From positions 253,260 to 317,259 of IMG/VR virus record IMGVR_UViG_3300032242_003291: 64,000 bases of DNA, one strand, 5' to 3'. Position 1 is the first letter of the stretch. Every line of letters begins with the position of its first letter. The position numbers and the translations under genes were made by a program. The notes under the pieces were generated by a model. That model had not been told where the DNA came from and made no database searches. It saw only the letters and a program-made list of their open reading frames with translations. Below are positions 8,801 to 64,000 of this stretch, piece after piece.

Positions 8801-8891
8801 GAGTTCCTGTATTAGTAAAATTGATGTAAGGTATACGTGTTGCCAACCTTGATACCGCATTACTCGGATAGATTATTATATTTTTAGCCAT
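5820..8891 (-). CDS. collagen-like fibre with inserted globular (PA14-like) domain, Cys/Tyr-rich tip and S74 chaperone
   Basis: Three Gly-X-Y segments, two globular inserts, then SDRRLKQGI...GLIAQNV. Confidence 0.85.
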
Positions 8892-15995: not shown

Positions 15996-15997
15996 AT

Positions 15998-43204: not shown

Positions 43205-43271
43205 TTATGATGTTATTATATCCTATAAGTATAGGTTTTAATGATATTTTGTATAGGTTTATCATATCTAA

Positions 43272-43916: not shown

Positions 43917-44131
43917 TGAACTACTGTTACTCCTGAAATTATACAATTATTATTATCAATCACTTTCAACATATAAGATGGTGAAGTGTTGTATGGCGAT
44001 GGTATGTCAAATATGTATGGAGTTGAACTTATTGTTGTAATATAAAAACAAGCCGAGCCATTGGGTTGACAAACAAACACATCGTATGGTGATTGTCCTG
44101 TTATACTATCTATTGTTACTTGAATTGCCAT
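43913..44131 (-). CDS. small beta-rich protein, paralog of the N-domain of the downstream gene
   Basis: QVTIDSITGQSPYDVFVC...KVIDNNNCI versus QVTITSVTANTPVNIYYC...KIVDTQGCI. Confidence 0.75.
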   Translation of the reverse strand: MAIQVTIDSITGQSPYDVFVCQPNGSACFYITTISSTPYIFDIPSPYNTSPSYMLKVIDNNNCIISGVTVVQ

Positions 44132-44144
44132 TATCTTAAATATT

Positions 44145-48595: not shown

Positions 48596-49137
48596 AAATG
48601 TTTGTCTATAAAGTTATCTATATTATCTGACCATAAGTCCATGGCCTCTGTTTTTATTCTATCTTCAGTCCAATCCCACCAAGAAATTTTTAATAAAGAT
48701 TCTATTTGTTTTTCACTGAATCGGTATTTTACTACTTTACTAGGATTTCCAACCACTATCGCATACGGTGGTACATCTTTAGCAATAGTCGCTGTTGAGC
48801 CAATTATTGCTCCGTGACCAATCTTAACTCCTGACATAATTGTAGACTTAGCGCCAATCCATACGTCGTTTCCAATTACAATATCCCCCTTACACGCAGG
48901 ATGACCCATACTCATATGCATGTCTGCAATCTCAGGTGTGACTGGTCCCCACAATTGTGAACTTGTTGTCACCCAATCAGGTCTATGATTTGCATGTAAA
49001 AAGAAATTGCAATCTCTTCCTATTGAAGTGTATTTTCCAACGTGGATATGGTATTGGTCACTCCAAGAAATTATGTTAACATTTCGGTCAAAATACGTTC
49101 CTCTATCCGCGTGCCAAAGATGAAGATTTTCTATCAT
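48592..49137 (-). CDS. CatB/Vat-like hexapeptide O-acetyltransferase
   Basis: IGNDVWIG, GVKIGHGAIIG, DVPPYAIVVGNP, WWDW. Confidence 0.9.
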   Translation of the reverse strand: MIENLHLWHADRGTYFDRNVNIISWSDQYHIHVGKYTSIGRDCNFFLHANHRPDWVTTSSQLWGPVTPEIADMHMSMGHPACKGDIVIGNDVWIGAKSTIMSGVKIGHGAIIGSTATIAKDVPPYAIVVGNPSKVVKYRFSEKQIESLLKISWWDWTEDRIKTEAMDLWSDNIDNFIDKHL

Positions 49138-52046
49138 TTTATTTGTAGTACGTTATTATAAAGTTTAGTTTTACTGTTTGTTCCAACTATTTCAATAATA
49201 TATGTCTTATCTGTTAAATGAATATTTGAAATGTAAAATAAAAAATATTGAAATAAATTTTGATTAGATAATGATTCGACAATTTCTCCATTAATTTGTT
49301 TTATTACAAAATCAACATTTTCGTTAATGCGTTTTGAGCCTAAAAAAGAATTTTTTTCAAAGAAAATTGTATCATTTTGATAATAAACCAAGACCTCTTC
49401 AGAATCTAAAACTGTGTTACCATAGTCTTTTTGTATACCTATAAATCTTTCTTTTGTTTTTAGTCCGTGAAATACTGCAATATCATTTTGATGGTTTGGT
49501 AATTTAACATAATTAGAAATTCCTGTCATATGGAACGGATGATTTACATCTGTAAACTTATCCATTTCAATATTATTTGTTTCTTCGATATCACATAAAT
49601 GTAAAGCTTTTTGAAGATTATGTTTTGATAAAACCACATTAGCAGAATCTTCGTCATGTAATGTAAAAATTCCAACTTCAGTTCCTTTATATTCTTGATA
49701 CATTTGAATTTGTTCTTCAAAAAACCATTTGGAGTTTGCATCAAACAACATTACATTAGTTTTTCTCCTTGGATATACACAAACATTAACTCCTGCTTTG
49801 TCTGCCAAAATACCAACAGTATCTGTCCATTTTTCGCCTTCCCTAATTCCACTTAGGTATAGTCTATCATGGATATGGGAATTAATCAACGGATAATTTT
49901 CTAATTGGTTGAAATAAGTTGATATGTCGTCAGCCGATACCGTTAGATAAATGTCACTATCAATAAAAATAAATTTTTTATCAGGATATTGATTGATAAC
50001 ATCAATCATTAATTTTGGTTTACTGCTGATTATATTTTCATCTCTACCCTTATCGTCTTTGTTACCTTTTTCAATATCAATTCTTCTTAAAATAAATTGC
50101 TCACTTGTTAAAAATTTAGATGGTATTTGATAATCAAAATTAATTGTATAAATGACACACTTTCTATTGGAATAATTATGTATTGATTCCATTAGATATT
50201 TTACTGTGGATGAATAATTTTCTGTAAATCCAAAAACCCAATAAAAATCATCTATGAATTTTTTATCATATTTGGCATAAATTTGATTTCCAACTTTATC
50301 AAATTTTGTATGTTCTTTTTTATAAAAATGATACAAAAATATTTCATCTTCGTTAATGAAGTTTTTACCTCCTCTCCAAACACAATCATATAAGTTTTTT
50401 CCAAATGAATTTGTGTTCATAGAATAAATCAACTTAACATCAAATTTATTCTTAGCCAATCTATCCATAACATCTTCTTCATAACATTTGACATCAGGAC
50501 TTTGAAAACATTCAATAAATTCATTTGTTTTATAAAATGTTCTTAACTCCTCAGTATTTTTTATTATTAAAAAAGGGCCCGATAACCTATCATGATATGT
50601 TTTTTCAGCGACAGAAATTATATCATGTTTTCCGAGTAAAGGGTAAACGTATTTAACAACATCACCAAATAAAGTATCAATATCATAACATCCAAAATAC
50701 TCATAATCCATTATATACTCCGAGAATATATCACCAAGAGATGCTTTCAAGTCACAAGTTTTCTTGTTATTTTTCAATTCAATTTTTGAACCAACTAAGT
50801 TTGATATTTTATCAACAATATTATTAAGGTCTGTTTTGATAACTCTATAATTTGGAGAATCTAGACTTATATCTTGGTCGGTTACAAATAAAAAATCAAC
50901 ATTTTTTAAATTTTTTGTTGTTTCATAATGAAACCAAAAATAATCGGGTATTTTACCAAGCCATAATTGTATCAAAACAATTTTTTTTCTGTAATCTTTT
51001 TGTAATATGATTTCTTTTGTTTCCCTATCACGAAAAACTATTTTTTTATCATCAAACCCTTTTTCGACAAATATCCAATAATTTAATTGAGGTTGTAAAT
51101 CAAGACTAAAAAAATCAATTAAATTATTTTCAAACCCTTCATATACTGAAATTTCAACTCTTTGCTCACTATATTTTTTATTTAAAAAATGAATCTTTTT
51201 TTTGTCGTCAGAAAAATAGGTTATTTCAATTTTTTTAGGATTATTTTTCATGTACCTATTTTTTATTTTATTTTCGATTGCTATCTTATATTCGTCAGCA
51301 TACTTATATTTTATTTTATCATTACTTTGAACTGAATTAACAGGTTTTTGCCATCTAGTTTTATCTGAATCTATTGATACCGCAAACTGTACTCTTTCAC
51401 ACTCTTCTATTAAATGATTGATACCATTGTGTTGGTAACATAATAAAAGAGCTCTCTCAATATTTAATGAATCTTGTTTTTCAAGAAATTTAAAATTATT
51501 TTCATCACATATATAATTACCTCCTCCTAATACTTTGTCTGAAAATTTACTGTCAAAAATATGATGTCTATCAGTGACACCGAAATATGATTCCGCTTCA
51601 GGAACGTATAACTTTCCCAAAGGTAATATAGGATGGTCTTTTACATAATAATAATCTGAACGAGATAATATTATCCTATCATATTCCAACAAGACATCTT
51701 TTTTATTTTTGAGGATATAATCTCTAAAAGCCAAAATTATAGCACCAGAACCGATGGCATTATCTATTCCACCCATAAAACCACTATGTTTATTAAGTTT
51801 GAAAATATAATCCCAGTTTCCTTCAAATGAATTTGAATAATAATCTCTCCAATTATCATATTCGGGCAACTCCCAAATATATTTTGCTCTTTTGTATAAT
51901 GAAGGAGTTTTATCATTTGTTTCTCCAAAACATAATGCTAAATCTGCATTATAAGGAGATAGAAGATGTTTATAAATTGTCTCCCAAGTTTCTTCACCAC
52001 CACGAGGATTACCCATTAATATGACTAAAGTTTTTTCCATTAACAA
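49134..52046 (-). CDS. multidomain glycosyltransferase-like protein (includes DUF6625-like and GT-A DxD domains)
   Basis: LSRSD..TDRH; WLGKIPDYF...KTCDLK...YDIDTLFG; SKP...FIDSD...DED. Confidence 0.7.
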   Translation of the reverse strand: MLMEKTLVILMGNPRGGEETWETIYKHLLSPYNADLALCFGETNDKTPSLYKRAKYIWELPEYDNWRDYYSNSFEGNWDYIFKLNKHSGFMGGIDNAIGSGAIILAFRDYILKNKKDVLLEYDRIILSRSDYYYVKDHPILPLGKLYVPEAESYFGVTDRHHIFDSKFSDKVLGGGNYICDENNFKFLEKQDSLNIERALLLCYQHNGINHLIEECERVQFAVSIDSDKTRWQKPVNSVQSNDKIKYKYADEYKIAIENKIKNRYMKNNPKKIEITYFSDDKKKIHFLNKKYSEQRVEISVYEGFENNLIDFFSLDLQPQLNYWIFVEKGFDDKKIVFRDRETKEIILQKDYRKKIVLIQLWLGKIPDYFWFHYETTKNLKNVDFLFVTDQDISLDSPNYRVIKTDLNNIVDKISNLVGSKIELKNNKKTCDLKASLGDIFSEYIMDYEYFGCYDIDTLFGDVVKYVYPLLGKHDIISVAEKTYHDRLSGPFLIIKNTEELRTFYKTNEFIECFQSPDVKCYEEDVMDRLAKNKFDVKLIYSMNTNSFGKNLYDCVWRGGKNFINEDEIFLYHFYKKEHTKFDKVGNQIYAKYDKKFIDDFYWVFGFTENYSSTVKYLMESIHNYSNRKCVIYTINFDYQIPSKFLTSEQFILRRIDIEKGNKDDKGRDENIISSKPKLMIDVINQYPDKKFIFIDSDIYLTVSADDISTYFNQLENYPLINSHIHDRLYLSGIREGEKWTDTVGILADKAGVNVCVYPRRKTNVMLFDANSKWFFEEQIQMYQEYKGTEVGIFTLHDEDSANVVLSKHNLQKALHLCDIEETNNIEMDKFTDVNHPFHMTGISNYVKLPNHQNDIAVFHGLKTKERFIGIQKDYGNTVLDSEEVLVYYQNDTIFFEKNSFLGSKRINENVDFVIKQINGEIVESLSNQNLFQYFLFYISNIHLTDKTYIIEIVGTNSKTKLYNNVLQIK

Positions 52047-52086
52047 ATTACCAATTGATTATTTAATTTAGTTTTTAAAACCACAC

Positions 52087-52665
52087 TTATTTTTTTTTGA
52101 ATTTTGCAGGGACTCCAACGTAAACCCCACTTGTTACTATGTTTTTAACCACAGTCGCATTAGCACCTATTATTACATTTGAACTAACGTGTATTTTTTC
52201 TTTAATTGATGAGTTATTACCCATATAAACATTTGAACTAATATTAACGTTTCCAGATACAATAGAACCTGGCATCGCACTAAAATAATCTCCAATCTTT
52301 GAATCATGACCTATTTGAACTCCTCTATTTAGTATTGCATGTGAACCTATTTTTATATTTGTTGTCAGTATTGAATAGGCCCCAATAAAACTACCTTCTC
52401 CTACTTCAATATAATCCAAAATTAATGCAGTTGGATGAACAAATGTAAAAAATTGGAGCCCTTTAGGTAATCGTTGAACCATTTCATACCTATCCTTGGA
52501 GTTTCCAATTGCAATCATTGCAACATGTTCGTTTGGGTCTAACATAGATAATGGTGATGTTTCGCTGTCAACATATTTGTCGTCAACAAATCGTTCTAAT
52601 TTAACCCCCATTTGTGCCATTACTTCTCTTGCATGACCACCATTTCCAATTAATACTTTTTTCAT
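52087..52665 (-). CDS. NeuD/PglD-like sugar N/O-acetyltransferase
   Basis: IGNGGHAREV, AIGNSKDR, VHPTA, GHDS, hexapeptide repeats, GVPAK. Confidence 0.9.
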   Translation of the reverse strand: MKKVLIGNGGHAREVMAQMGVKLERFVDDKYVDSETSPLSMLDPNEHVAMIAIGNSKDRYEMVQRLPKGLQFFTFVHPTALILDYIEVGEGSFIGAYSILTTNIKIGSHAILNRGVQIGHDSKIGDYFSAMPGSIVSGNVNISSNVYMGNNSSIKEKIHVSSNVIIGANATVVKNIVTSGVYVGVPAKFKKK

Positions 52666-53306
52666 TGTTTGTAAATTTCGTATTTTGATAAATCTGGATA
52701 TGGTAATTCCAAATCTAAATTATCTTTTTTACTTCCATCCAGATTATAAAATTGAGTCATCATCAACAATCCTCTTGCTGCAAGTTCAGGCATCATATAA
52801 AAATTCCAACCTAACATATCAAAATTATCGTCATGGTAAGAACATTCTCTTCTACCACTAAATCTGGCTCTCTTAAACCATAACATCGCCTGATAGTCAT
52901 CAGTAATTATTGCGCCTCCTTTACTCAATTTTAATGTCTTATAAGGTCCTGTAAATGATAGACACATATGTGTCCCTGAGACGTACATATCCGCAGTAAA
53001 CCTCAATGCTGAGTCAACAACATTACTTGGAAATAATCTGTAAGCCCCTTTAATTGTTTTTCCTTCAACAGGTGTGAAATTAACCTTCAATCCTGCATGA
53101 ATTATCTCACAAGGAACCGAAGGATATGTCTTCGAAGGACAGTCTACAGTGTCTCCTGTAAATGACTTCTTAACATGTTTTTCATAATATAACGCTAAGA
53201 ATAATGCGTTACTCATATTATCTAATGCAATAGCATGAGGAGCACCTGTGTAATCACACAATGTTTTCTCAAAATCTTCAGTAATTTTATGTACACCTTG
53301 TGCCAT
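52662..53306 (-). CDS. shortened DegT/DnrJ/EryC1-family sugar aminotransferase
   Basis: FEKTLCDYTGAPHAIAL, VDSA, SFTGPYKTL..KGGAIITDD, GWNFYM. Confidence 0.8.
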   Translation of the reverse strand: MAQGVHKITEDFEKTLCDYTGAPHAIALDNMSNALFLALYYEKHVKKSFTGDTVDCPSKTYPSVPCEIIHAGLKVNFTPVEGKTIKGAYRLFPSNVVDSALRFTADMYVSGTHMCLSFTGPYKTLKLSKGGAIITDDYQAMLWFKRARFSGRRECSYHDDNFDMLGWNFYMMPELAARGLLMMTQFYNLDGSKKDNLDLELPYPDLSKYEIYKQ

Positions 53307-53387
53307 TTAATTTAAGTTTTAGATTAAAAATATAATTGACATGTTTTATATTTTCAACTTTATATTTTGTGAAACAAATCACCTTTT

Positions 53388-54353
53388 TTATGACCGATAC
53401 ATAATCTCGACGTCATTTATCAAAGTTAAATTTTCCTCAATAGTGAAATCAATGTTAAAATATTTTATATCATTAATGAATGCCTTTGCGTTTTTTATAT
53501 CTGTAATTTCAACTTTTTTTGTATTCCAAGTTTTTGGTTGAATTTTTAAATTTGTAAAAAAATTGTCATTGATTATTAAATCAAGAGAAACTTCAATACT
53601 TGTTCCGTTATGAATAAAATAATTTAAATCATCACCACTTCTAAAAAAAGTAAAAGCAATTTTACTTAAAATATTTTCTGACATAATTTCACATTTTCCA
53701 AAATCTAAGAATTTCTCTAACTCTTGGTGATTCAATTTTAATACTTTTTGATTTTCAAATAACAACTCATAAACAGTTCTTTCACTTGAAAATAAATCAC
53801 TATCTAAATGAACTTTTTTATACAAGTCAAAGATTTTTTTATAGTTGTATTCAAATGTTTCAAAGTGAAATTTTTCCAAATTTATTGAAATTAAATTTCC
53901 AATAATATTACCTCTGTCGCTCTCATAGATAACAACATCGTTGTTTTCAAGTTTACTTTTGTTTATTTCAAGAATACTCAAATCTTTGATTAGTGCGTCA
54001 TATTCAAGAACATGAACTATTTTATATTCGGCATTTTTTAAAAAGGACAAAGGAAGTTGCCACAATCTAAGTATCGCAGGTACATGACTTGAAGGAAAGA
54101 AATAAGATTTATGCATAATATAAAAATCATCGTTGGCAAAGAATCTTTTTCCTTTCAATGAGTTGTCAGTAATAAATGGATTATTTTTATCATAAAAATA
54201 AAAATCAACATCTTCTACAATATCAAAAGGTAACACACAATGACTGGCAATACAAATTTTATACTTTGAATTAATTTGACGAATTAATTTTTTTAAAATA
54301 AGTTTTTTTTCGCTTGTGTTTGAAAAATCCGTTATAAGTACTATCTCACTCAT
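53388..54353 (-). CDS. glycosyltransferase-like hypothetical protein
   Basis: IASH, YDKNN, LEYDAL (DxD-like); lies in the glyco-locus. Confidence 0.55.
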   Translation of the reverse strand: MSEIVLITDFSNTSEKKLILKKLIRQINSKYKICIASHCVLPFDIVEDVDFYFYDKNNPFITDNSLKGKRFFANDDFYIMHKSYFFPSSHVPAILRLWQLPLSFLKNAEYKIVHVLEYDALIKDLSILEINKSKLENNDVVIYESDRGNIIGNLISINLEKFHFETFEYNYKKIFDLYKKVHLDSDLFSSERTVYELLFENQKVLKLNHQELEKFLDFGKCEIMSENILSKIAFTFFRSGDDLNYFIHNGTSIEVSLDLIINDNFFTNLKIQPKTWNTKKVEITDIKNAKAFINDIKYFNIDFTIEENLTLINDVEIMYRS

Positions 54354-54404
54354 TATTCAATAATTTATTTCCATTTGTAATTTTATTTCAAAAAATAAAA
54401 CCTT

Positions 54405-55169
54405 TTAAACCCAAAAATCGATATTTAGCCATTCGTCATTTACTGTATGACAATTTATTGATGGTTGTACTGTCCCTATTTTACAACTCTCACTATTAAT
54501 TAAATTAATTAAATCTTCGTCATTTTTATAGTTTAAAATACACGGATATTTATAAAAATTTTCATTTAGTATTGTTTTTCTACCCATTAATGCCATTTCT
54601 ATTGCTGTTGCCATTCCATTACCGTCAGACAAATTTAAGTTAAGAAAAGATTTATCGTAATAATTATTTTTCAAATAATTTATATCATAGTAATCATTAA
54701 TATTAAAATGATTCGTAGTTATTATTTCATAATTAATTTGTTTTTGTATTTGTTTTAATTTTTCAACGTTAAATTGATTACTCCATCCATTTTTAAAACC
54801 AGTATATGCATATATTTTATCCCCCAAAACATTAGGTTCAAACAATGAGTAATCTTTAACTTCTATCGTTACGTTTCTACAATTAACATTATCAGGTATT
54901 TTTGAAATTAATCTAACTTCTTCTAATATATTAATAATGAACAAATCATCTGTATTTGTGACTATATCAAAATTTGGTAGGTCATATGGGTTTGTAAGAA
55001 ATATAAATTTGTATGATTTATGATTTTGTATTTGATGAGATAATTCGTTTCCGCCAAAAAATATACATGGTTTGTTCACATCATAATATTCATCAAAATT
55101 ATATCTTTCAATAAAACCTTTTTTAAAAAAATTAACAGAAGGGGCAACAAGTGTTTGAGATATTCTCAT
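54405..55169 (-). CDS. glycosyltransferase-like hypothetical protein
   Basis: DGNGMATAIEMALMGRK resembles the GT-B E-x7-E region. Confidence 0.5.
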   Translation of the reverse strand: MRISQTLVAPSVNFFKKGFIERYNFDEYYDVNKPCIFFGGNELSHQIQNHKSYKFIFLTNPYDLPNFDIVTNTDDLFIINILEEVRLISKIPDNVNCRNVTIEVKDYSLFEPNVLGDKIYAYTGFKNGWSNQFNVEKLKQIQKQINYEIITTNHFNINDYYDINYLKNNYYDKSFLNLNLSDGNGMATAIEMALMGRKTILNENFYKYPCILNYKNDEDLINLINSESCKIGTVQPSINCHTVNDEWLNIDFWV

Positions 55170-55243
55170 TATATTATTATTTTTTTTATTTTTTATTTAT
55201 TTTTGAATTTGACAGCAACACCCACATTCAAATAACGCTAATT

Positions 55244-55870
55244 TCATTTTTTCTTATAATAAGAATATTCACCAAAATCGCCAACCAACTCACAATGTGG
55301 TGTTAAAAATTTATTAATAGAATTACGAACACTATCCCAACTGGAATCGTCCATAATAATATATCCTCCCTTCTTAACTAAAGGTAAATAAAGTAAAATG
55401 TCTCTTGATACATTCATCTCATTGTGATTTCCGTCAATATGTAATACATCTATCGATTCTTTTTCAAAATGAATGAATGAGTCCTCTGATGGTTCTCTAA
55501 TTATTGTAATTGTTTTCGATAAATCATTATTTTCAATAATTTCACAAACATTTTTGTAAATTGAATCAAAGGTTTCTTGTCCTTTTAATAATTCGTTATA
55601 AAAAAATTCTTCTTGATTTTTATCCCAAAAAGGGATTTCATTTTTTGACATTTCAAAAGACCATGGGTCAATACCAATAATTTTTCCTTCAATTTTTTCT
55701 AAAACCTCTGCAAAAGAAAATAAAGAACTACCTTTATACACTCCAATTTCAACACAAACTTTACTGTGAGTTGTTTTAATTAAATTATGTATAAGATTTC
55801 TTTTCTCATCAATACACCAACCTCCTTGGTCATAAACATCATTTTTAATTAATCCTCTTAAATTTCTCAT
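55244..55870 (-). CDS. class I SAM-dependent methyltransferase
   Basis: VEIGVYKGSS, GIDPW, LHIDGNH, GGYIIMDD. Confidence 0.9.
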   Translation of the reverse strand: MRNLRGLIKNDVYDQGGWCIDEKRNLIHNLIKTTHSKVCVEIGVYKGSSLFSFAEVLEKIEGKIIGIDPWSFEMSKNEIPFWDKNQEEFFYNELLKGQETFDSIYKNVCEIIENNDLSKTITIIREPSEDSFIHFEKESIDVLHIDGNHNEMNVSRDILLYLPLVKKGGYIIMDDSSWDSVRNSINKFLTPHCELVGDFGEYSYYKKK

Positions 55871-55871
55871 G

Positions 55872-56576
55872 TTATTTTTTTTGTATTATAATTTTTATAT
55901 TATCGTAACTATCGTAGTGTGTCCCAATTAGTTTCCAATCGGTGTTACCTTTCAAAACGTGTTGGTAAATATGAACCCCTTTACCGACCATTGGATAAGG
56001 AATAACCATATTATCTTCTTGACCATTAGCATGAAACCACTGAACATATGTACCTTGTTTATAATTGTCATCGATTACAATAATACTACCTTTTAACATT
56101 TTTGATTCGATTGCTTTAAACTCTTCCCAACCATGTAATGCACTTGGAAATGCATCAAATAAATTAAAATCCCAACTGTCTAAATGGACAAAATTAGGTA
56201 TTTCTTCAATATTTTTTAAAAACGAAACAGAATCACTTACGTGTATTGAATAATCCAAATTAGGAATAGCATCTTCAAATATTTTTACACTTTTTTCAAC
56301 AATGTTAGATGAGATGTCAACTGACGTCATTTTACCATTTGTGTTTTTTGCAACATACCCTAAAAAAAGACCAAATAACCCATCGTTATAGTTTGATGAT
56401 GCTCCAGTTTCTAAAACAATCAATTTATCAAAATTGAATTCATCATTAATTGAGTCAATAACTGTTTCACATTGTTGTCTCCTAATTCTGTGTGCATTTG
56501 AATTTTCATAATCAAAAATGACTGTCTTCATATGACTTAAGTATTCCTCATATCCCTCTAAAAAATTTTGTTTCAT
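55872..56576 (-). CDS. class I SAM-dependent methyltransferase
   Basis: VLETG, SVDIS, DSVSFL, HLDSWD, IVIDDN. Confidence 0.8.
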   Translation of the reverse strand: MKQNFLEGYEEYLSHMKTVIFDYENSNAHRIRRQQCETVIDSINDEFNFDKLIVLETGASSNYNDGLFGLFLGYVAKNTNGKMTSVDISSNIVEKSVKIFEDAIPNLDYSIHVSDSVSFLKNIEEIPNFVHLDSWDFNLFDAFPSALHGWEEFKAIESKMLKGSIIVIDDNYKQGTYVQWFHANGQEDNMVIPYPMVGKGVHIYQHVLKGNTDWKLIGTHYDSYDNIKIIIQKK

Positions 56577-56693
56577 TATTTATATATTTTGTATTTTGAT
56601 AAATCAGGATATGGTAATTCCAAATCTACATTATGTTTTTTACTTCCATTTAAATTATAAAATAAAGTCATCATAAGTAATCCCTTGTACCAT
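56576..56693 (-). pseudogene. internally deleted remnant of the DegT-like gene
   Basis: MVQG joined out of frame to GLLMMTLFYNLNGSKKHNVDLELPYPDLSKYKIYK*, matching both ends of 52662-53306. Confidence 0.85.
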
Positions 56694-56710
56694 TTAATTT
56701 AAGTTTTGGA

Positions 56711-56744
56711 TTGAAAATATAATTGATATGCATTATATTTTCAA
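56711..56744. promoter_or_regulatory. symmetric divergent promoter/operator
   Basis: TTGAAAATATAAT-N8-ATTATATTTTCAA perfect 13-bp inverted repeat between divergent genes. Confidence 0.6.
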
Positions 56745-56765
56745 CATTAAAAAGACATAATTGAA

Positions 56766-59054
56766 ATGAGTAAATCAAAAATTTTTGCACATGGTTCCTA
56801 TGTTGGTAACACAGGATATAATCAACACACAAGAGATTTTTTCAGACATCTTAGTAAACACGCAGATATAAAAGTTAGAAACTTTACGATAGGTAATTCT
56901 TGGAAGGGTTATTCCGAAAGACCACATGATAACGAAACTTACTTTAATGCAACCGATGAAAAACTATTATATCAACAAGTTCTTTGGAATGGTGACAACA
57001 CAAGAAGTAATTTTCCAATTTATTCAGATAAATCAAAAAATTTCACACCTGATGTTAACATTATATTATGTGAAACAAATCACCACCTTTTTTATGACCA
57101 ATACAATGGTCCGAAAATTGCATATAACGTATGGGAGTCTACATTGCAACCTAAAGAATACTTCAACAAATTAAAAGAATTTGATGAAATGTGGGTACCA
57201 TCAAAATGGCAAAGAGACTGTACCATAGCTCAAGGTTATGACCCAAACAAAATTAAAGTCGTTCCTGAAGGTGTTGATGTTAATACATTTTACCCCGATA
57301 ACTCAGTAAATCATCCATTAACAAAAGACAAGTTTACATTCTTTTTAGCGGGAAGATGGGATTATAGAAAATCTATCAAGGAAATTATTGAAACATTTAT
57401 AAAGACTTTTAATAACAACGAACCTGTTGAGTTAATTGTTTCTGTTGATAATCCATTTTCGAATGATGGATTAAACTCAACTGAAGAAAGATTGAAACAT
57501 TATGGGTTAGAAGATGATAGAATTAAAATTCTCCATTTCCCACCAAGAGAGGAATACATTAGATTGTTAAAATCTTGTAATGTATTTGTATCATGCGCAA
57601 GAGCAGAAGGTTGGAACTTACCACTTATTGAGGCTATGGCTTGTGGTACTCCGTCAATTTATTCAGATTGTTCAGGTCAGTTGGAATTTGCAGAGGGTAG
57701 AGGTATACCTGTTAAAATATCGCATGAATTACCTGTAAGTGCTAGTACATATAATCACTTCAACGATAATGTTGGAAACTATTATGAACCTGATTTTTAT
57801 GATTTGGGTATCAAAATAAAAAATGTGTTTGAGGATTATAAAAAGTATAAAATTTTTGCATTAGTAGAATCAGAACAAATTAGAGAAGAGTTTAGTTGGG
57901 AAAATGTTGCTAAAATAGGTATTGATACTATTAATGATTTTTTAGACAGAAAACCTTGGTTAAATAAACCAATCAAAACTAATGAAATTAAAATTAGTTA
58001 TTTAGATGGTCCAAGAGTTGAAGTATCAGGTGACGAAAAGAAAGATTATTTTGTTGAATTTATTGATAGTACCGATGGAAAGGTAATACATTCTCAAACT
58101 ATTAGTAATAACATGTGGGTTTCTTGTAGTAAAAAATACTATATTCCTTGGATAATTAAAATTAATGGTGAAGTTTACGATGAACTGAATTTAGAAGGAA
58201 AAACGGTAATGATTTCACTTGAATCAAAAGCTTTAGGTGATACTATATCTTGGGCACCATATGCTGTTGAATTTCAAAAGAAACATAATTGTAAGGTGTT
58301 ATTGTCCACTTTCAAAAATAACTTCTTTGAAGGTTTAGAATCATATAAAAATATAACCTTTATCAAACCAGGTGAATCTCATGGTTGTGATGTAATATAC
58401 AGAATCGGTTGGTTTAAAAAAGATAAGAAATGGGAAGATAGAGACAAAAATCCAAATCAACCAAACTTGATTCCACTTCAACAAGCAGCAACCGACATTT
58501 TAGGTTTAGAATATAAAGAACTTAACTTTGGTTTAAATTTTGAAAAAAAGGAAAAACCTATGGAAAAAGATTATGTAGTGTTCGCACCAAATGCAACTTC
58601 AGGTTGTAAAGAGTGGGATTATAATCATTGGGTGACATTATCTAAACTCATTAAAGAATTAGGATATGATGTTTTAACATTAACACAAAAACCATTTCAC
58701 ATAGATGGTGTATTAAATATTTGGGATGAACCTTTGGACGTTGTTGCAAACTACCTTTATCATGCCAAGGCTTACGTAGGGTTGGGTTCGGGATTATCTT
58801 GGTTTAATTGGGCTTTAGGGAATTATTCATTTATGGTTAATGGTTTTGCAAGACCTGACCACGAATTTACAACAAACATTACAAAAATTTATAACGAAAA
58901 TACTTGTATATTCTGTTGGAATGATGAAGTTTTTGTTTTTGACCCTGGTAATTGGAATTGGTGTCCAGTATATGAAGGGACAAAAAAACAACACGTTTGT
59001 CAAAGGTCTATTACACCATTACAAGTATTTCAACAACTAACAACTAAAATATAA
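56766..59054 (+). CDS. GT4 glycosyltransferase fused to a TibC/AAH-like protein O-heptosyltransferase
   Basis: EGWNLPLIEAMACG (GT4); SKKYY, SKALGDTISW, VGLGSGLSW, CIFCWN...WCP...C..SITP. Confidence 0.85.
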   Translation: MSKSKIFAHGSYVGNTGYNQHTRDFFRHLSKHADIKVRNFTIGNSWKGYSERPHDNETYFNATDEKLLYQQVLWNGDNTRSNFPIYSDKSKNFTPDVNIILCETNHHLFYDQYNGPKIAYNVWESTLQPKEYFNKLKEFDEMWVPSKWQRDCTIAQGYDPNKIKVVPEGVDVNTFYPDNSVNHPLTKDKFTFFLAGRWDYRKSIKEIIETFIKTFNNNEPVELIVSVDNPFSNDGLNSTEERLKHYGLEDDRIKILHFPPREEYIRLLKSCNVFVSCARAEGWNLPLIEAMACGTPSIYSDCSGQLEFAEGRGIPVKISHELPVSASTYNHFNDNVGNYYEPDFYDLGIKIKNVFEDYKKYKIFALVESEQIREEFSWENVAKIGIDTINDFLDRKPWLNKPIKTNEIKISYLDGPRVEVSGDEKKDYFVEFIDSTDGKVIHSQTISNNMWVSCSKKYYIPWIIKINGEVYDELNLEGKTVMISLESKALGDTISWAPYAVEFQKKHNCKVLLSTFKNNFFEGLESYKNITFIKPGESHGCDVIYRIGWFKKDKKWEDRDKNPNQPNLIPLQQAATDILGLEYKELNFGLNFEKKEKPMEKDYVVFAPNATSGCKEWDYNHWVTLSKLIKELGYDVLTLTQKPFHIDGVLNIWDEPLDVVANYLYHAKAYVGLGSGLSWFNWALGNYSFMVNGFARPDHEFTTNITKIYNENTCIFCWNDEVFVFDPGNWNWCPVYEGTKKQHVCQRSITPLQVFQQLTTKI

Positions 59055-59935
59055 TGAAGACAATATTAATTGAACTTATGTCAGGTTCTCTTGGTGACAC
59101 CATAGCAATTATGCCATGTGTAGAATATTTTATATCAAAAAATGATGATGATGTTCTTTTGAAGATAAATCCAAGATATCATTTTTTATTCACTAACTCA
59201 TACCCAACAATTAAATTCTACCAAGGCAACGAACATTTTGATAAAAAAATTCAACTACATTATAATTTTAATTTACCCCTACAAACAGGATTTGCACAAC
59301 AACTTGGATATGTTAATTGGACCTATATCAGACCAAAAGTCGATGTTAATGTAAAAGAAAGACCTATAAAATCCAAGTATGTTTCAATTAGCATACATTC
59401 AACATCTCAACTCAAATATTGGAATCATCCAATTGGAAAAAAATCACAACCATTATCTCCTTATTGGACCGAATTAAACGGATTATTGAGAAAGTCAGGT
59501 TATACTCCTGTTGTTGTAGAAAAAGATGAAATGTTTGGAATACCCCCACTCAGAAATGGTATGCCATCAAAATCAAATAATAAAATTGGTCTTAGTTTAG
59601 AAGACACAATAAATTATATATATCACTCAGATTTTTTCATAGGACTATCTTCAGGACTATCTTGGCTTGCACATGCAATGGGAAAAAAAGTTGTAATGAT
59701 ATCAAACTTCTCGGATGAAACTCATGAATTTGATTTATCCTGTGAAGATTATATAAGAATAACTAATAAATCAGTTTGTCATGGTTGTTGGAATAAAATT
59801 AATCAAGATTATAATTTTGATTCATCTGATTGGTATTGGTGTCCCAAACATAAAGATACTCCAAGAGAGTTTGAATGTCATACTTCAATAACACCTGATT
59901 ATGTTATTGAACAAATTAAACAATGGATAAATTAA
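59054..59935 (+). CDS. TibC/AAH-like protein O-heptosyltransferase
   Basis: SLGDTIA, KYWNHP, FIGLSSGLSWLAHAMGKKVVMISNFS, CHGCWN...WCPKH...FECHTSITP. Confidence 0.88.
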   Translation: MKTILIELMSGSLGDTIAIMPCVEYFISKNDDDVLLKINPRYHFLFTNSYPTIKFYQGNEHFDKKIQLHYNFNLPLQTGFAQQLGYVNWTYIRPKVDVNVKERPIKSKYVSISIHSTSQLKYWNHPIGKKSQPLSPYWTELNGLLRKSGYTPVVVEKDEMFGIPPLRNGMPSKSNNKIGLSLEDTINYIYHSDFFIGLSSGLSWLAHAMGKKVVMISNFSDETHEFDLSCEDYIRITNKSVCHGCWNKINQDYNFDSSDWYWCPKHKDTPREFECHTSITPDYVIEQIKQWIN

Positions 59936-59939
59936 AATT

Positions 59940-60938
59940 ATGTTTGAATTATTAAGTTACGATATACAAAAAGATGAAAAAAAAATTGTAATACAAATTT
60001 TCTTTCGTAACAACTCGGACAACTCCTATGATGTTAATACATTATTTGAGGATTCAATCTTCAATCAATGTCAGAAATTTAGAACTATGACAGTAAACCC
60101 AAATTCAACTCATTGGGTTTCTTGGGATTTATCTCAGGATTTGGATACCGCATCAGATGAGATAAATGGATTACAGTTGAGGGCATTATGGGGTGCCAAT
60201 TTCAAAATATTAATTGATGACAAAGTTGTTGCAGAATTTCCATTAAAATATACTTTTACCAATTTAAATCTAAGAAAAGGATTGAAAAATTTTTCACCAT
60301 TCAATAAGAAAAAGTTTTGGATTCTTGGCGATTCTCATTCAGGATTTTACACAAACACGTCCCCTGATTATTTAAAAACATCAAAATACGACATAATACC
60401 GTCAGGTTTATTGGGGCTATCGTTAAATAACTTTTTAAATGAAGAATTTGATAGATGGTTTGACTCTTTACCAATTTGGGATAATGATATTGTTGCAATT
60501 GATGTTGGTGAACTCGATATAAGATGTGGTCTTTTTCACTTTGCAAGTAAAAATGACTTAAATGTATATTCCATTACTGATGATTTATTAAAAAGATACT
60601 TTGATTTTCTATTAAGATTTAAACAAAAGTACAAAAATGAGTTGGTTATATTGACACCTAACAGACCAATAAAAGATGGGTGCCTCGATGGAAACGCAGA
60701 ATATTTCAAATTAACCATATCTAATACAAGTGAAAGACTTGAACTATGGAATTATTTCAATATTAAATTAAAATTATTCTGTGAAGAAAACTCAATAAAA
60801 TACTGGGATATCAAACACATGTATACAGATAAAGATGGAACATTGTTCAATGACATACTTTATTACAACGATATACACATAAAAGTCAAAGAACCAATGT
60901 TGTTTGACTTAAGACATAAAATAGAAAATAATTTTTAA
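59940..60938 (+). CDS. SGNH/GDSL-like esterase or acyltransferase
   Basis: ILGDSH, GELDIR, DIH. Confidence 0.65.
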   Translation: MFELLSYDIQKDEKKIVIQIFFRNNSDNSYDVNTLFEDSIFNQCQKFRTMTVNPNSTHWVSWDLSQDLDTASDEINGLQLRALWGANFKILIDDKVVAEFPLKYTFTNLNLRKGLKNFSPFNKKKFWILGDSHSGFYTNTSPDYLKTSKYDIIPSGLLGLSLNNFLNEEFDRWFDSLPIWDNDIVAIDVGELDIRCGLFHFASKNDLNVYSITDDLLKRYFDFLLRFKQKYKNELVILTPNRPIKDGCLDGNAEYFKLTISNTSERLELWNYFNIKLKLFCEENSIKYWDIKHMYTDKDGTLFNDILYYNDIHIKVKEPMLFDLRHKIENNF

Positions 60939-60939
60939 C

Positions 60940-61659
60940 ATGGATTTATCTAAATTTGATTGGGGTTGGATGGACAAACCAACAACTAGAACACTATCAA
61001 GTAAAGGGATTACAAAGTCATATGGACAATGGCATAAAGACATCATTACAGATGAAATATTCGAACAAAAATTATATGAACAATTTTTTCCTGTTGAAGA
61101 AGGAGATATTGTTATGGACTTCGGTGCAAGTGTAGGTCCATTTACATATTCCATCTTAGATAAGAAACCAAAACATGTTTATTGTTTTGAGCCGAGTCCA
61201 CAAGAAATTAGTACATTAATTAAAAACACTCAAGACGGACCTGTTACAGTAATAAATAAGGGTATTTCTGACGTTGAGGGTGAGTTTGAATTTAATTTGT
61301 TTGGTGTTGAAGATGGAACAAGAATCGCTAAATCAACTACGTTTGATTCCATTAAAAAAGAGTTTAATATTACTAAAATTGATTTTATCAAAACAGATTG
61401 TGAAGGTGGTGAATACTCTATTTTTAACAATAAAAATATTTTTTGGATTAAAGAAAATGTTAGAAAGGTAGTCGGTGAGTGGCATTTAGATAGTCCTCAA
61501 AGAAAGGAGCAATTCAGAGTTTTCAGAGATACTTATTTACGTTTGTTTCCAAATATTGAAGTTTTTGCTATTGATGGTGTCAATATTAAATGGGAATTAT
61601 GGAAAGACCATTTTATTGATTATTATCGTCAAATTATAGTTTATATCGATAATAGATAA
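60940..61659 (+). CDS. FkbM-family methyltransferase
   Basis: VMDFGASVG, FEP, IKTDCEGGE, GEWH. Confidence 0.9.
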   Translation: MDLSKFDWGWMDKPTTRTLSSKGITKSYGQWHKDIITDEIFEQKLYEQFFPVEEGDIVMDFGASVGPFTYSILDKKPKHVYCFEPSPQEISTLIKNTQDGPVTVINKGISDVEGEFEFNLFGVEDGTRIAKSTTFDSIKKEFNITKIDFIKTDCEGGEYSIFNNKNIFWIKENVRKVVGEWHLDSPQRKEQFRVFRDTYLRLFPNIEVFAIDGVNIKWELWKDHFIDYYRQIIVYIDNR

Positions 61660-61660
61660 A

Positions 61661-61689
61661 AAAAAAGGGGAGTTTAGCTCCCCTTTTTT
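61661..61689. terminator. bidirectional terminator
   Basis: AAAAAAGGGGAG-TTTAG-CTCCCCTTTTTT between convergent genes. Confidence 0.85.
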
Positions 61690-61695
61690 ATTTTA

Positions 61696-64000
61696 TTACT
61701 TTATTGGTTTGTATTCTAAAAGAACCTTTTCAATATCTTTACGTTCAGCTTGAATGAAGAAACTTGTATTTATTTTTTCTGTCTCAGAATCTATATACAC
61801 TTTATTATCTTCGACTTTAACAACGTAGTGAATTGTTGCTGTCCCAATTGGTGTAAGTTGAACTGTGATAGTATCTTCGTGTACTAAATTTACCCAATAT
61901 TCAGGTAATTCAATTACATTTGAAGTTACTATACCTCTTACGTAAACTCCATGTTCTGGTCCTTCTAACACACCGTATCTTAATCTGAATCCTTCTTTTG
62001 TTGGGTGAGTGATATCAAATGATTTAGATGCCGCTGTTAAATTACCTGTCATCGTAGTATCTCCTGTCACATTCAAGGTTGCTCCATCATATCTTAGACC
62101 TGCATTACCTTGAACCGTGCCAGCTGTTCCCGTTGCAGTTACAATCCAAGTATTTGTATTGTTATTGATAACTGCTGAGTTTCCTGACGTACCAGAACTT
62201 CCTGAGCTACCACTCGAACCAGATGTTCCAGAACTTCCTGACGTGCCGCTAGCACCTGAAACACCACTTGTTCCTGAAGAACCAGATGAACCTGAGCTAC
62301 CACTTGTTCCTGAGCTTCCTGAAGAACCAGATGTTCCTGAGCTTCCTGAAGAACCAGATGTTCCTGAGCTACCACTTGAACCAGATGTTCCTGAGCTACC
62401 ACTTGAACCAGATGTTCCTGAAGAACCAGATGAACCTGAGCTACCACTTGTTCCCGAAGAACCGCTCGAACCAGAAGTTCCTGAGCTACCACTTGAGCCA
62501 CTTGTTCCTGATGAACCAGAGCTACCACTTGTTCCTGATGAACCTGATGAACCTGAGCTACCACTTGTTCCTGAGCTACCGCTTGAACCAGACGTCCCTG
62601 ATGAACCAGACGTTCCAGAGCTTCCTGAAGTACCACTTGAGCCACTTGTTCCTGATGAGCCAGAGCTACCACTTGTTCCTGATGAGCCAGAGCTACCACT
62701 TGAACCAGACGTTCCTGAAGAACCTGAACTACCACTTGTTCCTGAAGAACCACTTGAGCCAGATGTTCCTGAACTACCAGATACACCTCTTAAACCTGCA
62801 ATAGATATTGTCCATGAAGACGCTAAAGTAGTTCCAGAGTTATAATCAGCAGCAATCGCGAAAGTTGTTCCTGTTATACTTACTGTACCTTCAAAGAAAT
62901 TAGAAGTAGTATTTATCGCTCTTACTCTGTCACCTGTAACGAATGCACCTTGTTGATTCACAGTTAAAGTTATTGTACCAGTAGATGCTGGAGTTGCGGA
63001 TGTAGTTGAAGTTACATTATTATAACCAAGTCCTGAAGTTCCTGATGTTCCTGATGAGCCAGAGCTACCACTTGTTCCTGATGAGCCTGAACTACCACTT
63101 GTTCCAGAAGAACCTGATGAACCTGAGCTACCAGATGTTCCTGATGAACCTGATGAACCTGAAGTTCCTGAGCTACCACTTGAGCCACTTGTTCCTGATG
63201 AACCTGATGAACCTGAGCTACCACTTGTTCCAGAAGAACCTGAGCTACCACTTGTTCCTGATGAACCAGATGTTCCAGAGCTTCCTGAAGTACCACTTGA
63301 GCCACTTGTTCCTGAAGAACCTGAGCTACCACTTGTTCCAGAAGAACCAGATGAGCCAGAGCTACCACTTGTTCCCGAAGAACCTGAGCTACCACTTGTT
63401 CCTGATGAACCAGATGTTCCAGAGCTTCCTGAAGTACCACTTGAGCCACTTGTTCCTGATGAGCCAGAGCTACCACTTGTTCCTGAAGAACCCGAGCTAC
63501 CCGATGTTCCTGATGAACCAGATGTTCCAGAGCTTCCTGAAGTACCACTTGAGCCACTTGTTCCTGAAGAACCTGAAACGCCTCTCACACCTGCGATAGA
63601 TATTGTCCATGAAGACGCTAAAGTCGTTCCCGAGTTATAATCAGCTGCAATTGCGAAAGTTGTTCCAGTTATACTCACAGTACCTTCAAAGAAGTTAGAT
63701 GTAGTGTTCACTGCTCTTACTCTATCACCTGTTATAAACGCTCCTTGTTGATTTACGGTTAATGTTATAGTTCCTGTTGATGCTGGTGTTACCGATGTAG
63801 TTGAAGTTACATTACTATAACCAAGTCCTGATGTTCCTGATGTTCCTGAAGAACCTGAGCTACCACTTGTTCCTGAGCTACCACTTGAGCCAGATGTTCC
63901 TGATGAACCTGAGCTACCACTTGTACCTGAGCTACCGCTTGAACCACTTGTTCCAGAAGAACCAGATGAGCCAGAGCTACCACTTGTTCCTGAGCTACCG
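61696..64000 (-). CDS. Gly-Ser/Thr repeat fibre protein, 5'-truncated by the window
   Basis: Frame is open to the window edge; (GSS/GTS)n blocks, duplicated ~85-aa domain, C-terminal KSFDITHP...LEGPEHGVYVRG...AERKD fibre domain. Confidence 0.9.
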   Translation of the reverse strand, partial: GSSGTSGSSGSSGSSGTSGSSGSSGTSGSSGSSGTSGSSGSSGTSGSSGSSGTSGTSGLGYSNVTSTTSVTPASTGTITLTVNQQGAFITGDRVRAVNTTSNFFEGTVSITGTTFAIAADYNSGTTLASSWTISIAGVRGVSGSSGTSGSSGTSGSSGTSGSSGTSGSSGSSGTSGSSGSSGTSGSSGTSGSSGTSGSSGTSGSSGSSGTSGSSGSSGSSGTSGSSGSSGTSGSSGTSGSSGTSGSSGTSGSSGSSGTSGSSGSSGSSGTSGSSGSSGTSGSSGSSGTSGSSGSSGSSGTSGSSGSSGTSGSSGSSGTSGTSGLGYNNVTSTTSATPASTGTITLTVNQQGAFVTGDRVRAINTTSNFFEGTVSITGTTFAIAADYNSGTTLASSWTISIAGLRGVSGSSGTSGSSGSSGTSGSSGSSGTSGSSGSSGSSGTSGSSGSSGTSGSSGTSGSSGTSGSSGTSGSSGSSGTSGSSGSSGSSGTSGSSGSSGTSGSSGSSGTSGSSGSSGTSGSSGSSGSSGTSGSSGSSGTSGSSGSSGTSGSSGSSGTSGSSGSSGTSGSSGSSGSSGTSGVSGASGTSGSSGTSGSSGSSGSSGTSGNSAVINNNTNTWIVTATGTAGTVQGNAGLRYDGATLNVTGDTTMTGNLTAASKSFDITHPTKEGFRLRYGVLEGPEHGVYVRGIVTSNVIELPEYWVNLVHEDTITVQLTPIGTATIHYVVKVEDNKVYIDSETEKINTSFFIQAERKDIEKVLLEYKPIK

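What the first reader, a model, noticed from the sequence alone, without database searches (positions are those of the whole stretch)
56766..59935. Tandem iron-finger TibC/AAH-like transferases, one fused to GT4
Seen: both keep the four-Cys motif (CxxCWN...WCP...C). Known: TibC is a ferric-iron-binding dodecamer using ADP-heptose. No heptose-synthesis genes are in this window. Inference: a hetero-oligomer with priming and GT4 extension activities, possibly using a non-heptose donor.
Basis: partly seen in the sequence, partly recalled or inferred. Interest (0 to 1): 0.62.

Follow-up and report, generated by a model that had tools for sequence, protein, structure and literature searches.

The report
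Phage TibC-like protein glycosylation module
A 317-kb freshwater jumbo phage carries two iron-finger sugar transferases related to the bacterial adhesin enzyme TibC, one fused to a second transferase, and across phages this module travels with serine/threonine-rich collagen-like fibre genes, so it most likely sugar-coats the phage's own fibres.

Summary
Window 56766-59054 encodes a 762-aa fusion of a GT4 domain, a TibC-type beta-barrel and a BAHT catalytic domain. Window 59054-59935 encodes a 293-aa BAHT catalytic domain with no barrel. Both pass the curated TibC/AAH model. Both keep the four iron-finger cysteines, the catalytic Asp and the phosphate and sugar contacts. TibC is the closest solved structure for both.

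The window is the end of a 317-kb phage record. It holds no autotransporter, and the searches found no GmhA or HldE-kinase type gene in the whole record.

Both proteins group with bacterial BAHTs, not with the LPS heptosyltransferases. They belong to a large phage clade that mostly lacks Arg-286, TibC's adenine contact. GT4-BAHT fusions, often with methyltransferase domains, recur in phage lineages only 31-38% identical.

BAHT genes are strongly tied to (Gly-Ser/Thr-Ser/Thr)n collagen-like genes: 23 of 72 such phage records carry one, against 0 of 74 with other collagen repeats. One such gene lies 1.7 kb downstream here.

Best reading: a phage protein O-glycosylation module for its collagen-like fibres. 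A long/short heteromer is supported by a model only. The donor sugar is unresolved.

The parts
56577..56765 (.). Divergent intergenic region upstream of the four-gene + strand operon
   Evidence: 189-bp gap between the - strand gene ending at 56576 and the ATG at 56766. One promoter-like site lies at 56711-56739 (+). This is a consensus match only, and such sites are no more frequent here than in shuffles.
56766..59054 (+). P0001, 762 aa: fusion of GT4, TibC-type beta-barrel and BAHT catalytic domain
57063..57935 (+). GT4 (retaining GT-B) domain of P0001, about aa 100-390, with an E-x7-E motif at aa 281-289
   Evidence: Pfam Glycos_transf_1 57 bits (cut-off 26.4) and Glyco_trans_1_4 46 bits. 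Motif position.
57987..58163 (+). TibC-type N-terminal beta-barrel of P0001 (aa 408-466)
   Evidence: Pfam TibC_1st E 3.2e-5, below gathering. The alignment to TibC starts at TibC residue 28.
58203..59042 (+). BAHT catalytic domain of P0001, with D492, T611, K615 and W679 equivalent to TibC D110, T226, K230 and W305; V at the Arg-286 position
58905..59000 (+). Iron-finger of P0001 (C714, C717, C733, C745)
59054..59935 (+). P0002, 293 aa: BAHT catalytic domain without the beta-barrel, with D15, T117, K121 and W204; T at the Arg-286 position. Its start overlaps the P0001 stop (TAATG).
   Evidence: AlphaFold model pLDDT 85.8; Foldseek top hit TibC with TM 0.83.
59777..59878 (+). Iron-finger of P0002 (C242, C245, C263, C275)
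59940..60938 (+). P0003, 332 aa, same operon. No family match. Has a GDSHS motif. A possible SGNH/GDSL-like esterase or acyltransferase is a lead only.
   Evidence: Not found in the related loci.
60940..61659 (+). P0004, 239 aa, FkbM-family methyltransferase, last gene of the operon
   Evidence: Pfam Methyltransf_21 44 bits and TIGR01444 62.8 bits. A homologue lies next to the BAHT genes in many related loci, and FkbM is fused to BAHT in others.
61661..61689 (.). Bidirectional terminator-like hairpin between the operon and the convergent collagen-like gene
   Evidence: This is a pattern match; 2 were found in the region against 2.1 expected from shuffles.
61696..63999 (-). Collagen-like protein made of (Gly-Ser/Thr-Ser)n tracts, roughly 85-aa globular inserts and a conserved C-terminal domain. 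It runs off the contig end. Proposed acceptor.
   Evidence: Pfam Collagen E 3.2e-56. Sequence. The C-terminal domain matches phrog_17490, of unknown function.
47747..56576 (-). Neighbouring sugar-tailoring genes: FkbM methyltransferase (47747-48595), hexapeptide acyltransferase (48592-49137), DUF6625 protein (49134-52046), PglD-like acetyltransferase (52087-52665), 214-aa DegT-like protein (52662-53306), two unknowns, Methyltransf_24/CmcI-like methyltransferase (55244-55870) and a methyltransferase-like protein (55872-56576)
   Evidence: Several are syntenic with the BAHT genes in related phage contigs.

Best explanation
This is a phage-encoded, cytoplasmic protein O-glycosylation module.

Proposed steps:
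1. The BAHT domains of P0001 and P0002 attach a first sugar to Ser/Thr hydroxyls of the phage's own Ser/Thr-rich collagen-like fibre proteins. The candidates are the convergent neighbour at 61696-63999 and the collagen-like gene at the other contig end. The PT-rich proteins are possible further acceptors.
2. The GT4 domain fused to the long BAHT extends that sugar.
3. The operon's FkbM enzyme and the neighbouring methyl- and acyltransferases tailor the glycan.

The barrel-less short paralogue most likely works bound to, or right after, the long one. The donor comes from the host's nucleotide-sugar pool, because the searches found no heptose pathway in the phage.

Shown: the domain identities, conserved catalytic residues, phylogeny, operon layout and co-occurrence statistics.
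Inferred: the acceptor, the order of the steps, the heteromer and the donor.
For: 1. Family identity.

2. Both copies look catalytically intact. D110, T226, K230, W305 and the four Cys are invariant in 42 phage homologues.

3. The setting is a phage: 317-kb virus record, tail-fibre PHROGs, SbcC and primase.

4. Domain fusions act as a Rosetta stone:
- GT4-BAHT in 8 of 9 divergent phage proteins scanned.
- Chains combining FkbM, a GT32-like domain, GT4 and BAHT, or GT4, BAHT and FkbM.
- MT-GT4-BAHT, MT24-BAHT and the 1226-aa Mel-JY01 protein.

5. Co-occurrence with Ser/Thr-type collagen repeats:
- 23 of 72 phage records chosen only for (Gly-Ser/Thr-Ser/Thr)x8 codons carry a BAHT, against 0 of 74 chosen for other collagen repeats. 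Fisher p is 1e-8.
- Among records at least 90% complete the counts are 6 of 11 against 0 of 13.
- In reverse, 12 of 20 BAHT records hold the repeat, against 0 of 40 controls.

6. Adjacency. 13 of 21 fetched loci have such a collagen gene within 6 kb of the BAHT gene, and 5 have it within 720 bp. These BAHTs fall into 19 clusters at 60% identity.

7. Here, the collagen-like gene ends 1.7 kb downstream of P0002, across a shared hairpin from the operon's last gene.

8. Heteromer:
- ipSAE 0.66 against a best control of 0.00. That mark was reached by 58 of 80 solved complexes and 2 of 110 mismatched pairs. The three runs agree in at least 95% of contacts, and partner pLDDT is at least 91.
- TAATG overlap of the two genes.
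- The long+short tandem recurs in more than 10 contigs.
- Three records that first looked short-only (29, 84 and 100% complete) also hold a long copy. One 100%-complete record has the fusion alone.
Against: - No biochemical or proteomic data exist, so the acceptor rests on association only.
- The co-occurrence test does not control for shared ancestry or habitat of the phages.
- In the first set of relatives, only about 7 of 28 loci had an S/T-rich ORF within 8 kb.
- The collagen-like protein's C-terminal domain matches only PHROGs of unknown function, so 'fibre' is itself an inference.
- TibC's known substrates are beta-helical autotransporter passengers, not collagen helices (PMC4358343).
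- The complex prediction may simply echo the solved TibC homo-oligomer, and its interface is small, about 20 contacts.
- Long and short copies lie 35-50 kb apart in some phages.
Confidence: 0.6

Rival explanations
1. The enzymes glycosylate other phage proteins rather than the collagen-like repeats. Candidates are the large proteins with Pro/Thr-rich linkers (window 40250-47465, and four more elsewhere in the genome) or capsid and tail proteins.
For: 8 of 233 proteins of at least 150 aa in the genome have S/T-rich stretches, and 6 of these are PT-linker proteins. Two of them lie 9-16 kb upstream of the operon. From my own knowledge, PT linkers are classic O-glycosylation sites.
Against: The cross-phage association and adjacency were measured for Gly-Ser/Thr-Ser/Thr repeats. 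PT-linker co-occurrence was not tested. The two readings are not exclusive.
Confidence: 0.15
2. The module modifies host proteins or the host surface during infection, for example adhesins or autotransporters. The purpose would be to block superinfection or re-adsorption, not to decorate the virion.
For: All characterised BAHTs act on bacterial surface adhesins (PMC4358343). From my own knowledge, phage sugar genes have been proposed to remodel host surfaces.
Against: Residues conserved in cellular BAHTs in and near the iron finger, the part reported to contact TibA, are replaced in the phage clade (R360, R372, also D181 and R183). The link to phage collagen-like genes is tight. The host is unknown.
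Confidence: 0.12
3. P0002 is a non-catalytic scaffold or regulatory subunit of the long enzyme, not a second transferase.
For: It lacks the beta-barrel. Deleting the barrel abolishes TibC activity (PMC4358343). It was not seen without a long copy except in two record fragments, 24% and 28% complete.
Against: Catalytic Asp15, T117, K121, W204 and the G-x-S-G donor loop are invariant across 26 short homologues that average 59% identity.
Confidence: 0.1
4. They are LPS-core type GT9 heptosyltransferases acting on lipid acceptors.
For: Weak Pfam Glyco_transf_9 hits.
Against: Scores against the LPS heptosyltransferase models are 19-20 bits against cut-offs of 185. The tree separates them from WaaC/F/U with support 95. 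The fold match to TibC has TM 0.83, against 0.47-0.62 for WaaC and WaaF. The iron-finger insertion is absent from WaaC/F/U.
Confidence: 0.03

Closest known systems
Bacterial autotransporter heptosyltransferases (BAHT: TibC, AAH, BimC; NCBIfam TIGR04414; PDB 4RAP/4RB4)
   Same: GT-B catalytic core with the four-Cys iron-finger insertion. Catalytic Asp and the T226, K230 and W305 contacts are kept. The long copy has the N-terminal beta-barrel. About 29-34% identity. Both proteins pass the curated cut-off.
   Different: - Encoded by a phage with no autotransporter next door.
- Fused to GT4.
- Accompanied by a second, barrel-less paralogue.
- The Arg-286 adenine contact is replaced, and a residue is deleted in the 276-279 loop.
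- R360 and R372 of the iron finger and D181/R183 are replaced.
- The thumb-tip residues differ.
- The searches found no heptose pathway in the phage.
LPS heptosyltransferases WaaC/WaaF (GT9)
   Same: Same CAZy-type fold, and the catalytic Asp and Lys align. By analogy, successive GT9 paralogues add sugar on sugar. That analogy is from my own knowledge.
   Different: No iron finger, a lipid acceptor, a separate clade and much weaker fold and HMM scores.
Virion O-glycosylation in mycobacteriophages (Freeman et al. 2023, as cited in PMC12619734; otherwise my own knowledge)
   Same: Phage-encoded cytoplasmic glycosyltransferases decorate Ser/Thr-rich parts of structural proteins. The GT4 domain here has weak similarity (22-26%) to glycosyltransferases annotated in actinophages.
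   Different: Those systems have no BAHT or iron-finger enzyme and no collagen-like acceptors.
Glycosylated collagen-like proteins such as BclA of the Bacillus anthracis exosporium (my own knowledge, not checked here)
   Same: Gly-X-Thr type collagen repeats carry O-linked, methylated and acylated amino-sugar glycans. The sugar-tailoring gene set is similar: aminotransferase-like, acyltransferase and methyltransferase.
   Different: Different glycosyltransferase families, and a bacterial spore surface rather than a phage.
Microcystis phage Mel-JY01 gene product WWT39291.1 (annotated 'methyltransferase FkbM')
   Same: Closest protein in an isolated phage: 44% identity over 99% of P0001, with GT4 and BAHT domains in one 1226-aa chain.
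   Different: It has about 470 extra residues between the two domains, and no separate short paralogue was seen in the fetched region.

Membership tests
BAHT (TibC/AAH, TIGR04414) | Score above the curated equivalog cut-off (200 bits) | tested here: met
   P0001 scores 218 bits. P0002 scores 201 bits, a narrow pass.
BAHT (TibC/AAH, TIGR04414) | Four-cysteine iron-finger insertion (TibC C339, C342, C358, C370) | tested here: met
   All four align in both proteins. They are invariant in the 42 phage and 74 cellular homologues. Iron binding itself cannot be tested here.
BAHT (TibC/AAH, TIGR04414) | Catalytic base Asp-110 and donor contacts Thr-226, Lys-230, Trp-305 | tested here: met
   P0001 has D492, T611, K615 and W679. 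P0002 has D15, T117, K121 and W204.
BAHT (TibC/AAH, TIGR04414) | Arg-286, the adenine N1 contact that explains ADP specificity; R286A abolishes or largely reduces activity (PMC4358343) | tested here: not met
   Val in P0001 and Thr in P0002. Arg is present in 70 of 74 cellular homologues, in 1 of 42 close phage homologues and in 5 of 21 distant phage homologues.
BAHT (TibC/AAH, TIGR04414) | N-terminal beta-barrel (TibC residues 1-97), required for TibC activity | tested here: inconclusive
   Present in P0001, with a weak Pfam hit and an alignment from TibC residue 28. Absent from P0002, which starts at model position 83. The fold model has no barrel.
BAHT (TibC/AAH, TIGR04414) | Beta-hairpin thumb and ring-shaped dodecamer | not testable with these tools
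   The thumb tip F265/V266 is V/L in P0001 and P/L in P0002. F368 is H in P0001 and F in P0002. Only a 1:1 complex was modelled.
BAHT (TibC/AAH, TIGR04414) | Acts on an adjacent AIDA-type autotransporter | tested here: not met
   The bacterial references sit next to AIDA-type genes. The window has none, and the neighbours are phage genes.
BAHT (TibC/AAH, TIGR04414) | ADP-heptose as donor | not testable with these tools
   No GmhA or HldE-kinase match in this record or GmhA match in five other BAHT phage records. All five cellular genomes with a BAHT that were checked have a GmhA-like match, two of them above the curated cut-off. The host is unknown.
LPS heptosyltransferases (WaaC/WaaF, GT9) | Score above the family cut-offs and grouping with WaaC/WaaF | tested here: not met
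   19.9 and 18.6 bits against a cut-off of 185. Separate clade.
GT4 (Glycos_transf_1) | Pfam gathering score and the E-x7-E motif | tested here: met
   57 bits against 26.4. Motif at P0001 aa 281-289.

The most novel reading that the evidence does not exclude
A widespread, undescribed virion glycosylation system of aquatic phages, with three parts:
- Iron-finger BAHT enzymes fused to GT4, and often to methyltransferases, hyperglycosylate proline-free (Gly-Ser/Thr-Ser)n collagen-like fibres. The sugars may stabilise or shield the triple helix.
- In this clade the enzymes have lost the adenine contact and draw on a donor other than ADP-heptose.
- They work as a long/short hetero-oligomer.
Probability: 0.3. 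Interest if true: 0.8.

Novelty: new variant of a known kind. Interest (0 to 1): 0.66.

Why it matters
BAHTs are known only as virulence-associated modifiers of bacterial autotransporter adhesins. Four things would follow from a large phage branch of the family.

- **Range of the enzyme class.** The word search found 1765 protein clusters at 90% identity for the short paralogue alone. If most of these are viral, which was not tallied, the class is much wider than thought.
- **A testable acceptor.** The link to Ser/Thr-type collagen-like genes names a concrete candidate substrate.
- **Virion glycosylation beyond actinophages.** No papers in the searched library describe it for phages like this one.
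- **Donor specificity.** The Arg-286-less clade is a natural experiment on how donor specificity is set in GT9-type enzymes.

Glycan-coated fibres would also bear on host recognition and on the stability of proline-free collagen helices.

Tried and rejected
- **Near-identical DNA in isolated phages.** None found. Protein-level relatives among isolates are limited to Mel-JY01 and huge metagenomic phages.
- **Literature.** No paper in the searched library links BAHT, TibC or the TIGR04414 name to phages, or links collagen-like proteins to phage glycosylation.
- **Moraphage link.** The 'moraphage' paper (PMC12619734) mentions unspecified core glycosyltransferases in large aquatic phages with predicted Bacteroidota hosts. 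Whether this record belongs to that lineage was not tested.
- **GDP-sugar donor idea.** This genome has Gmd, a GDP-fucose-synthase-like gene and two more SDRs at G000 83.7-88.5 kb. Gmd is absent from five other BAHT phage records, so I dropped it as an explanation for the BAHT donor.
- **Host inference from the phage DnaJ.** Best identity to 301 Bacteroidota genomes is 39-40%. No conclusion is possible.
- **P0003.** No family match. The Atlas gives only a 0.85 lead to GDSL lipases.
- **First adjacency screen.** Within 8 kb of the BAHT genes in close relatives, only about 7 of 28 loci were positive. The whole-record tests replaced this screen.
- **Iron-finger regex.** My strict pattern missed many divergent BAHTs, so I replaced it with an HMM.
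- **Not run.** Read laying was not used. No sequence taken for human was met.
Full report
**What is there.** The window is the last 64 kb of a 317,259-bp IMG/VR virus record, 33% G+C and rated complete by CheckV. It is a jumbo phage. It has collagen-like proteins that match tail-fibre PHROGs, an SbcC-like nuclease and a primase.

Four genes form a + strand operon in an otherwise mostly - strand region:
- P0001 (56766-59054)
- P0002 (59054-59935)
- P0003 (59940-60938)
- P0004 (60940-61659)

The operon starts after a 189-bp divergent gap. It ends at a terminator-like hairpin (61661-61689) shared with a convergent gene. The P0001 stop and the P0002 start overlap as TAATG.

**The two transferases.** P0001 has three parts:
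- a GT4 domain, Pfam Glycos_transf_1 at 57 bits, with an E-x7-E motif at aa 281-289
- a TibC-type beta-barrel, a weak hit at aa 408-466
- a BAHT catalytic domain, TIGR04414 at 218 bits against a cut-off of 200

P0002 is the catalytic domain alone. It starts at model position 83 and scores 201 bits. TibC is the only close solved relative of both, with E 1e-32 to 1e-34. A confident model of P0002 (pLDDT 85.8) matches TibC at TM 0.83, against 0.47-0.62 for WaaC and WaaF.

I used the residue roles given in the TibC structure paper (PMC4358343). Both proteins keep the catalytic Asp-110, Thr-226, Lys-230, Trp-305 and the four iron-binding cysteines. Both replace Arg-286, the adenine N1 contact, with Val in P0001 and Thr in P0002.

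**Where they sit in the family.** The tree used 42 phage homologues, 5 plasmid-borne bacterial BAHTs that mostly lie next to AIDA-type genes, and E. coli WaaC/WaaF/WaaU (references).

| Grouping | Support |
|---|---|
| All iron-finger proteins against the LPS enzymes | 95 |
| Bacterial BAHTs | 100 |
| Phage short paralogues | 100 |
| GT4-fused long domains | 100 |
| Most phage long forms together with the short forms | 95 |

The duplication therefore happened within phages. The two copies are only about 29% identical.

Cellular homologues are common. At least 569 stretches in the species-representative genomes encode one, mostly in Pseudomonadota and Negativicutes. None is more than 39% identical to P0001's domain.

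Arg-286 counts are as follows:

| Set | With Arg-286 |
|---|---|
| Cellular homologues | 70 of 74 |
| Close phage homologues | 1 of 42 |
| More distant phage homologues | 5 of 21 |

Other residues conserved in cells are also lost in the phage clade: D181, R183, D276, G279, R360 and R372. The donor-loop residues G298, S301, G302, W305 and E326 are kept.

**Donor.** This record has no SIS_2/GmhA, PfkB kinase or NTP_transferase match. Five other BAHT phage records, three of them at least 98% complete, also have no GmhA. All five cellular genomes with a BAHT that I checked have a GmhA-like match, two of them above the curated cut-off.

The donor must therefore come from the host pool. The sugar and phosphate contacts are conserved, which argues for a heptose-like sugar. 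The lost adenine contact argues for a changed nucleotide, or at least a changed binding mode. I cannot decide between these. I put ADP-heptose at roughly even odds.

**What the module is for.**

*Domain fusions.* In phage BAHTs only 31-38% identical to this one, 8 of 9 scanned are again GT4-BAHT fusions. Some chains add FkbM, GT32-like or GT25-like domains. Other relatives are MT-GT4-BAHT and MT24-BAHT, and the Mel-JY01 protein has GT4 and BAHT domains in one 1226-aa chain. BAHT, GT4 and methyltransferases therefore act on one product.

*Neighbours.* On the - strand lie a second FkbM, two hexapeptide acyltransferases, a DegT-like protein, a CmcI-like methyltransferase and a DUF6625 protein. 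Several of these are syntenic in relatives.

*The acceptor.* The convergent gene at 61696-63999 is a collagen-like protein built of (Gly-Ser/Thr-Ser)n (Pfam Collagen, E 3e-56).

I tested the link between BAHT genes and such repeats across IMG/VR:

| Records chosen for | Trait scored | All records | At least 90% complete |
|---|---|---|---|
| (GGN WSN WSN)x8 codons | carries a BAHT | 23 of 72 | 6 of 11 |
| Other collagen repeats | carries a BAHT | 0 of 74 | 0 of 13 |
| A BAHT homologue | holds the S/T repeat | 12 of 20 | 3 of 3 |
| Other collagen repeats (control) | holds the S/T repeat | 0 of 40 | 0 of 13 |

Fisher p is 1e-8 for the first comparison and 9e-8 for the reverse one.

Around the BAHT genes of the first set, 13 of 21 loci have such a collagen gene within 6 kb, and five have it within 720 bp. 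These BAHTs fall into 19 clusters at 60% identity.

The tests do not correct for shared ancestry or habitat. They point to an acceptor but do not prove one.

**Heteromer.**
- The complex model of P0001's BAHT part with P0002 passed. ipSAE was 0.66 against a best control of 0.00.
- That mark was reached by 58 of 80 solved complexes and 2 of 110 mismatched pairs. The three runs agree in at least 95% of contacts, and partner pLDDT is at least 91.
- The contacts join the thumb region of the long copy to the N-lobe of the short one.
- The result may echo the solved TibC oligomer, and my own alignments were used.
- Three records that first looked short-only (29, 84 and 100% complete) also hold a long copy, sometimes 35-50 kb away. 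One 100%-complete record has the fusion alone.
- This fits an accessory role for the short copy. Its catalytic residues are invariant, so I expect it to be active.

**Verdict.** The proteins are members of the BAHT superfamily by sequence and fold, but they depart from the characterised family in four ways:
- phage setting
- GT4 fusion
- a barrel-less paralogue
- loss of the adenine contact, with a different likely acceptor

Sequence databases already auto-name these proteins, for example JGI. I found no paper describing them in phages, so I rate this a new variant of a known kind.

Noticed in passing
window 61696-63999 and G000 1 to about 600: Both ends of the 317-kb contig lie inside collagen-like (Gly-Ser/Thr-X)n coding repeats on the - strand. 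The assembly probably broke in one long repeat gene of a circularly permuted genome.
   Followed up: partly
window 52662-53306 (-): A 214-aa protein matches only the N-terminal part of DegT/PLP sugar aminotransferases (profile positions 26-98 of 360). It is nevertheless the best conserved gene of the island, at 88-92% identity in the closest relatives. It may be a truncated but selected form with another role.
   Followed up: no
G000 76,500-88,900 (outside the window): A second sugar cluster. It holds GDP-mannose 4,6-dehydratase (416.7 bits against a cut-off of 415), a GDP-fucose-synthase-like SDR and two more SDRs. The adjacent ORFs look like glycosyltransferases by eye only, including a GT11-like motif; these were not scanned.
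   Followed up: partly
window 40250-43204 and 44145-47465 (-); also 5820-8891: Very large Cys-rich proteins with long Thr-Pro linkers. The 984-aa protein and the 1023-aa collagen-like fibre share an N-terminal domain, seen as the same conserved motifs in both sequences. These proteins are other possible O-glycosylation acceptors.
   Followed up: no
G000 248,147-248,993 (outside the window): An NMNAT-like nucleotidyltransferase (144 aa) lies next to an adenylylsulfate-kinase-like P-loop protein. This is not a heptose pathway.
   Followed up: no
L061 and L064 (genome contigs): The two cellular hits most like the phage enzymes also lack Arg-286. One is a 26-kb contig of a 'Bacteroides sp.' MAG and the other a 238-kb contig of a Pseudobdellovibrionaceae MAG. 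They may be phage contigs binned into MAGs.
   Followed up: no
window 15078-16004 (-), 25584-27929 (-), 12668-13981 (-): The phage encodes a DnaJ-like chaperone, a type I restriction-modification-like N6 methylase and a leucine-rich-repeat protein; all three were named from their sequences only. A DnaJ gene and the large aquatic genome recall the 'moraphages' (PMC12619734), but the best DnaJ identity to Bacteroidota is only 39-40%.
   Followed up: partly
window 59940-60938 (+): P0003 has a GDSHS motif, and the Atlas gives a weak lead to GDSL lipases. It is absent from all related loci fetched, so it is a lineage-specific addition to the operon.
   Followed up: partly
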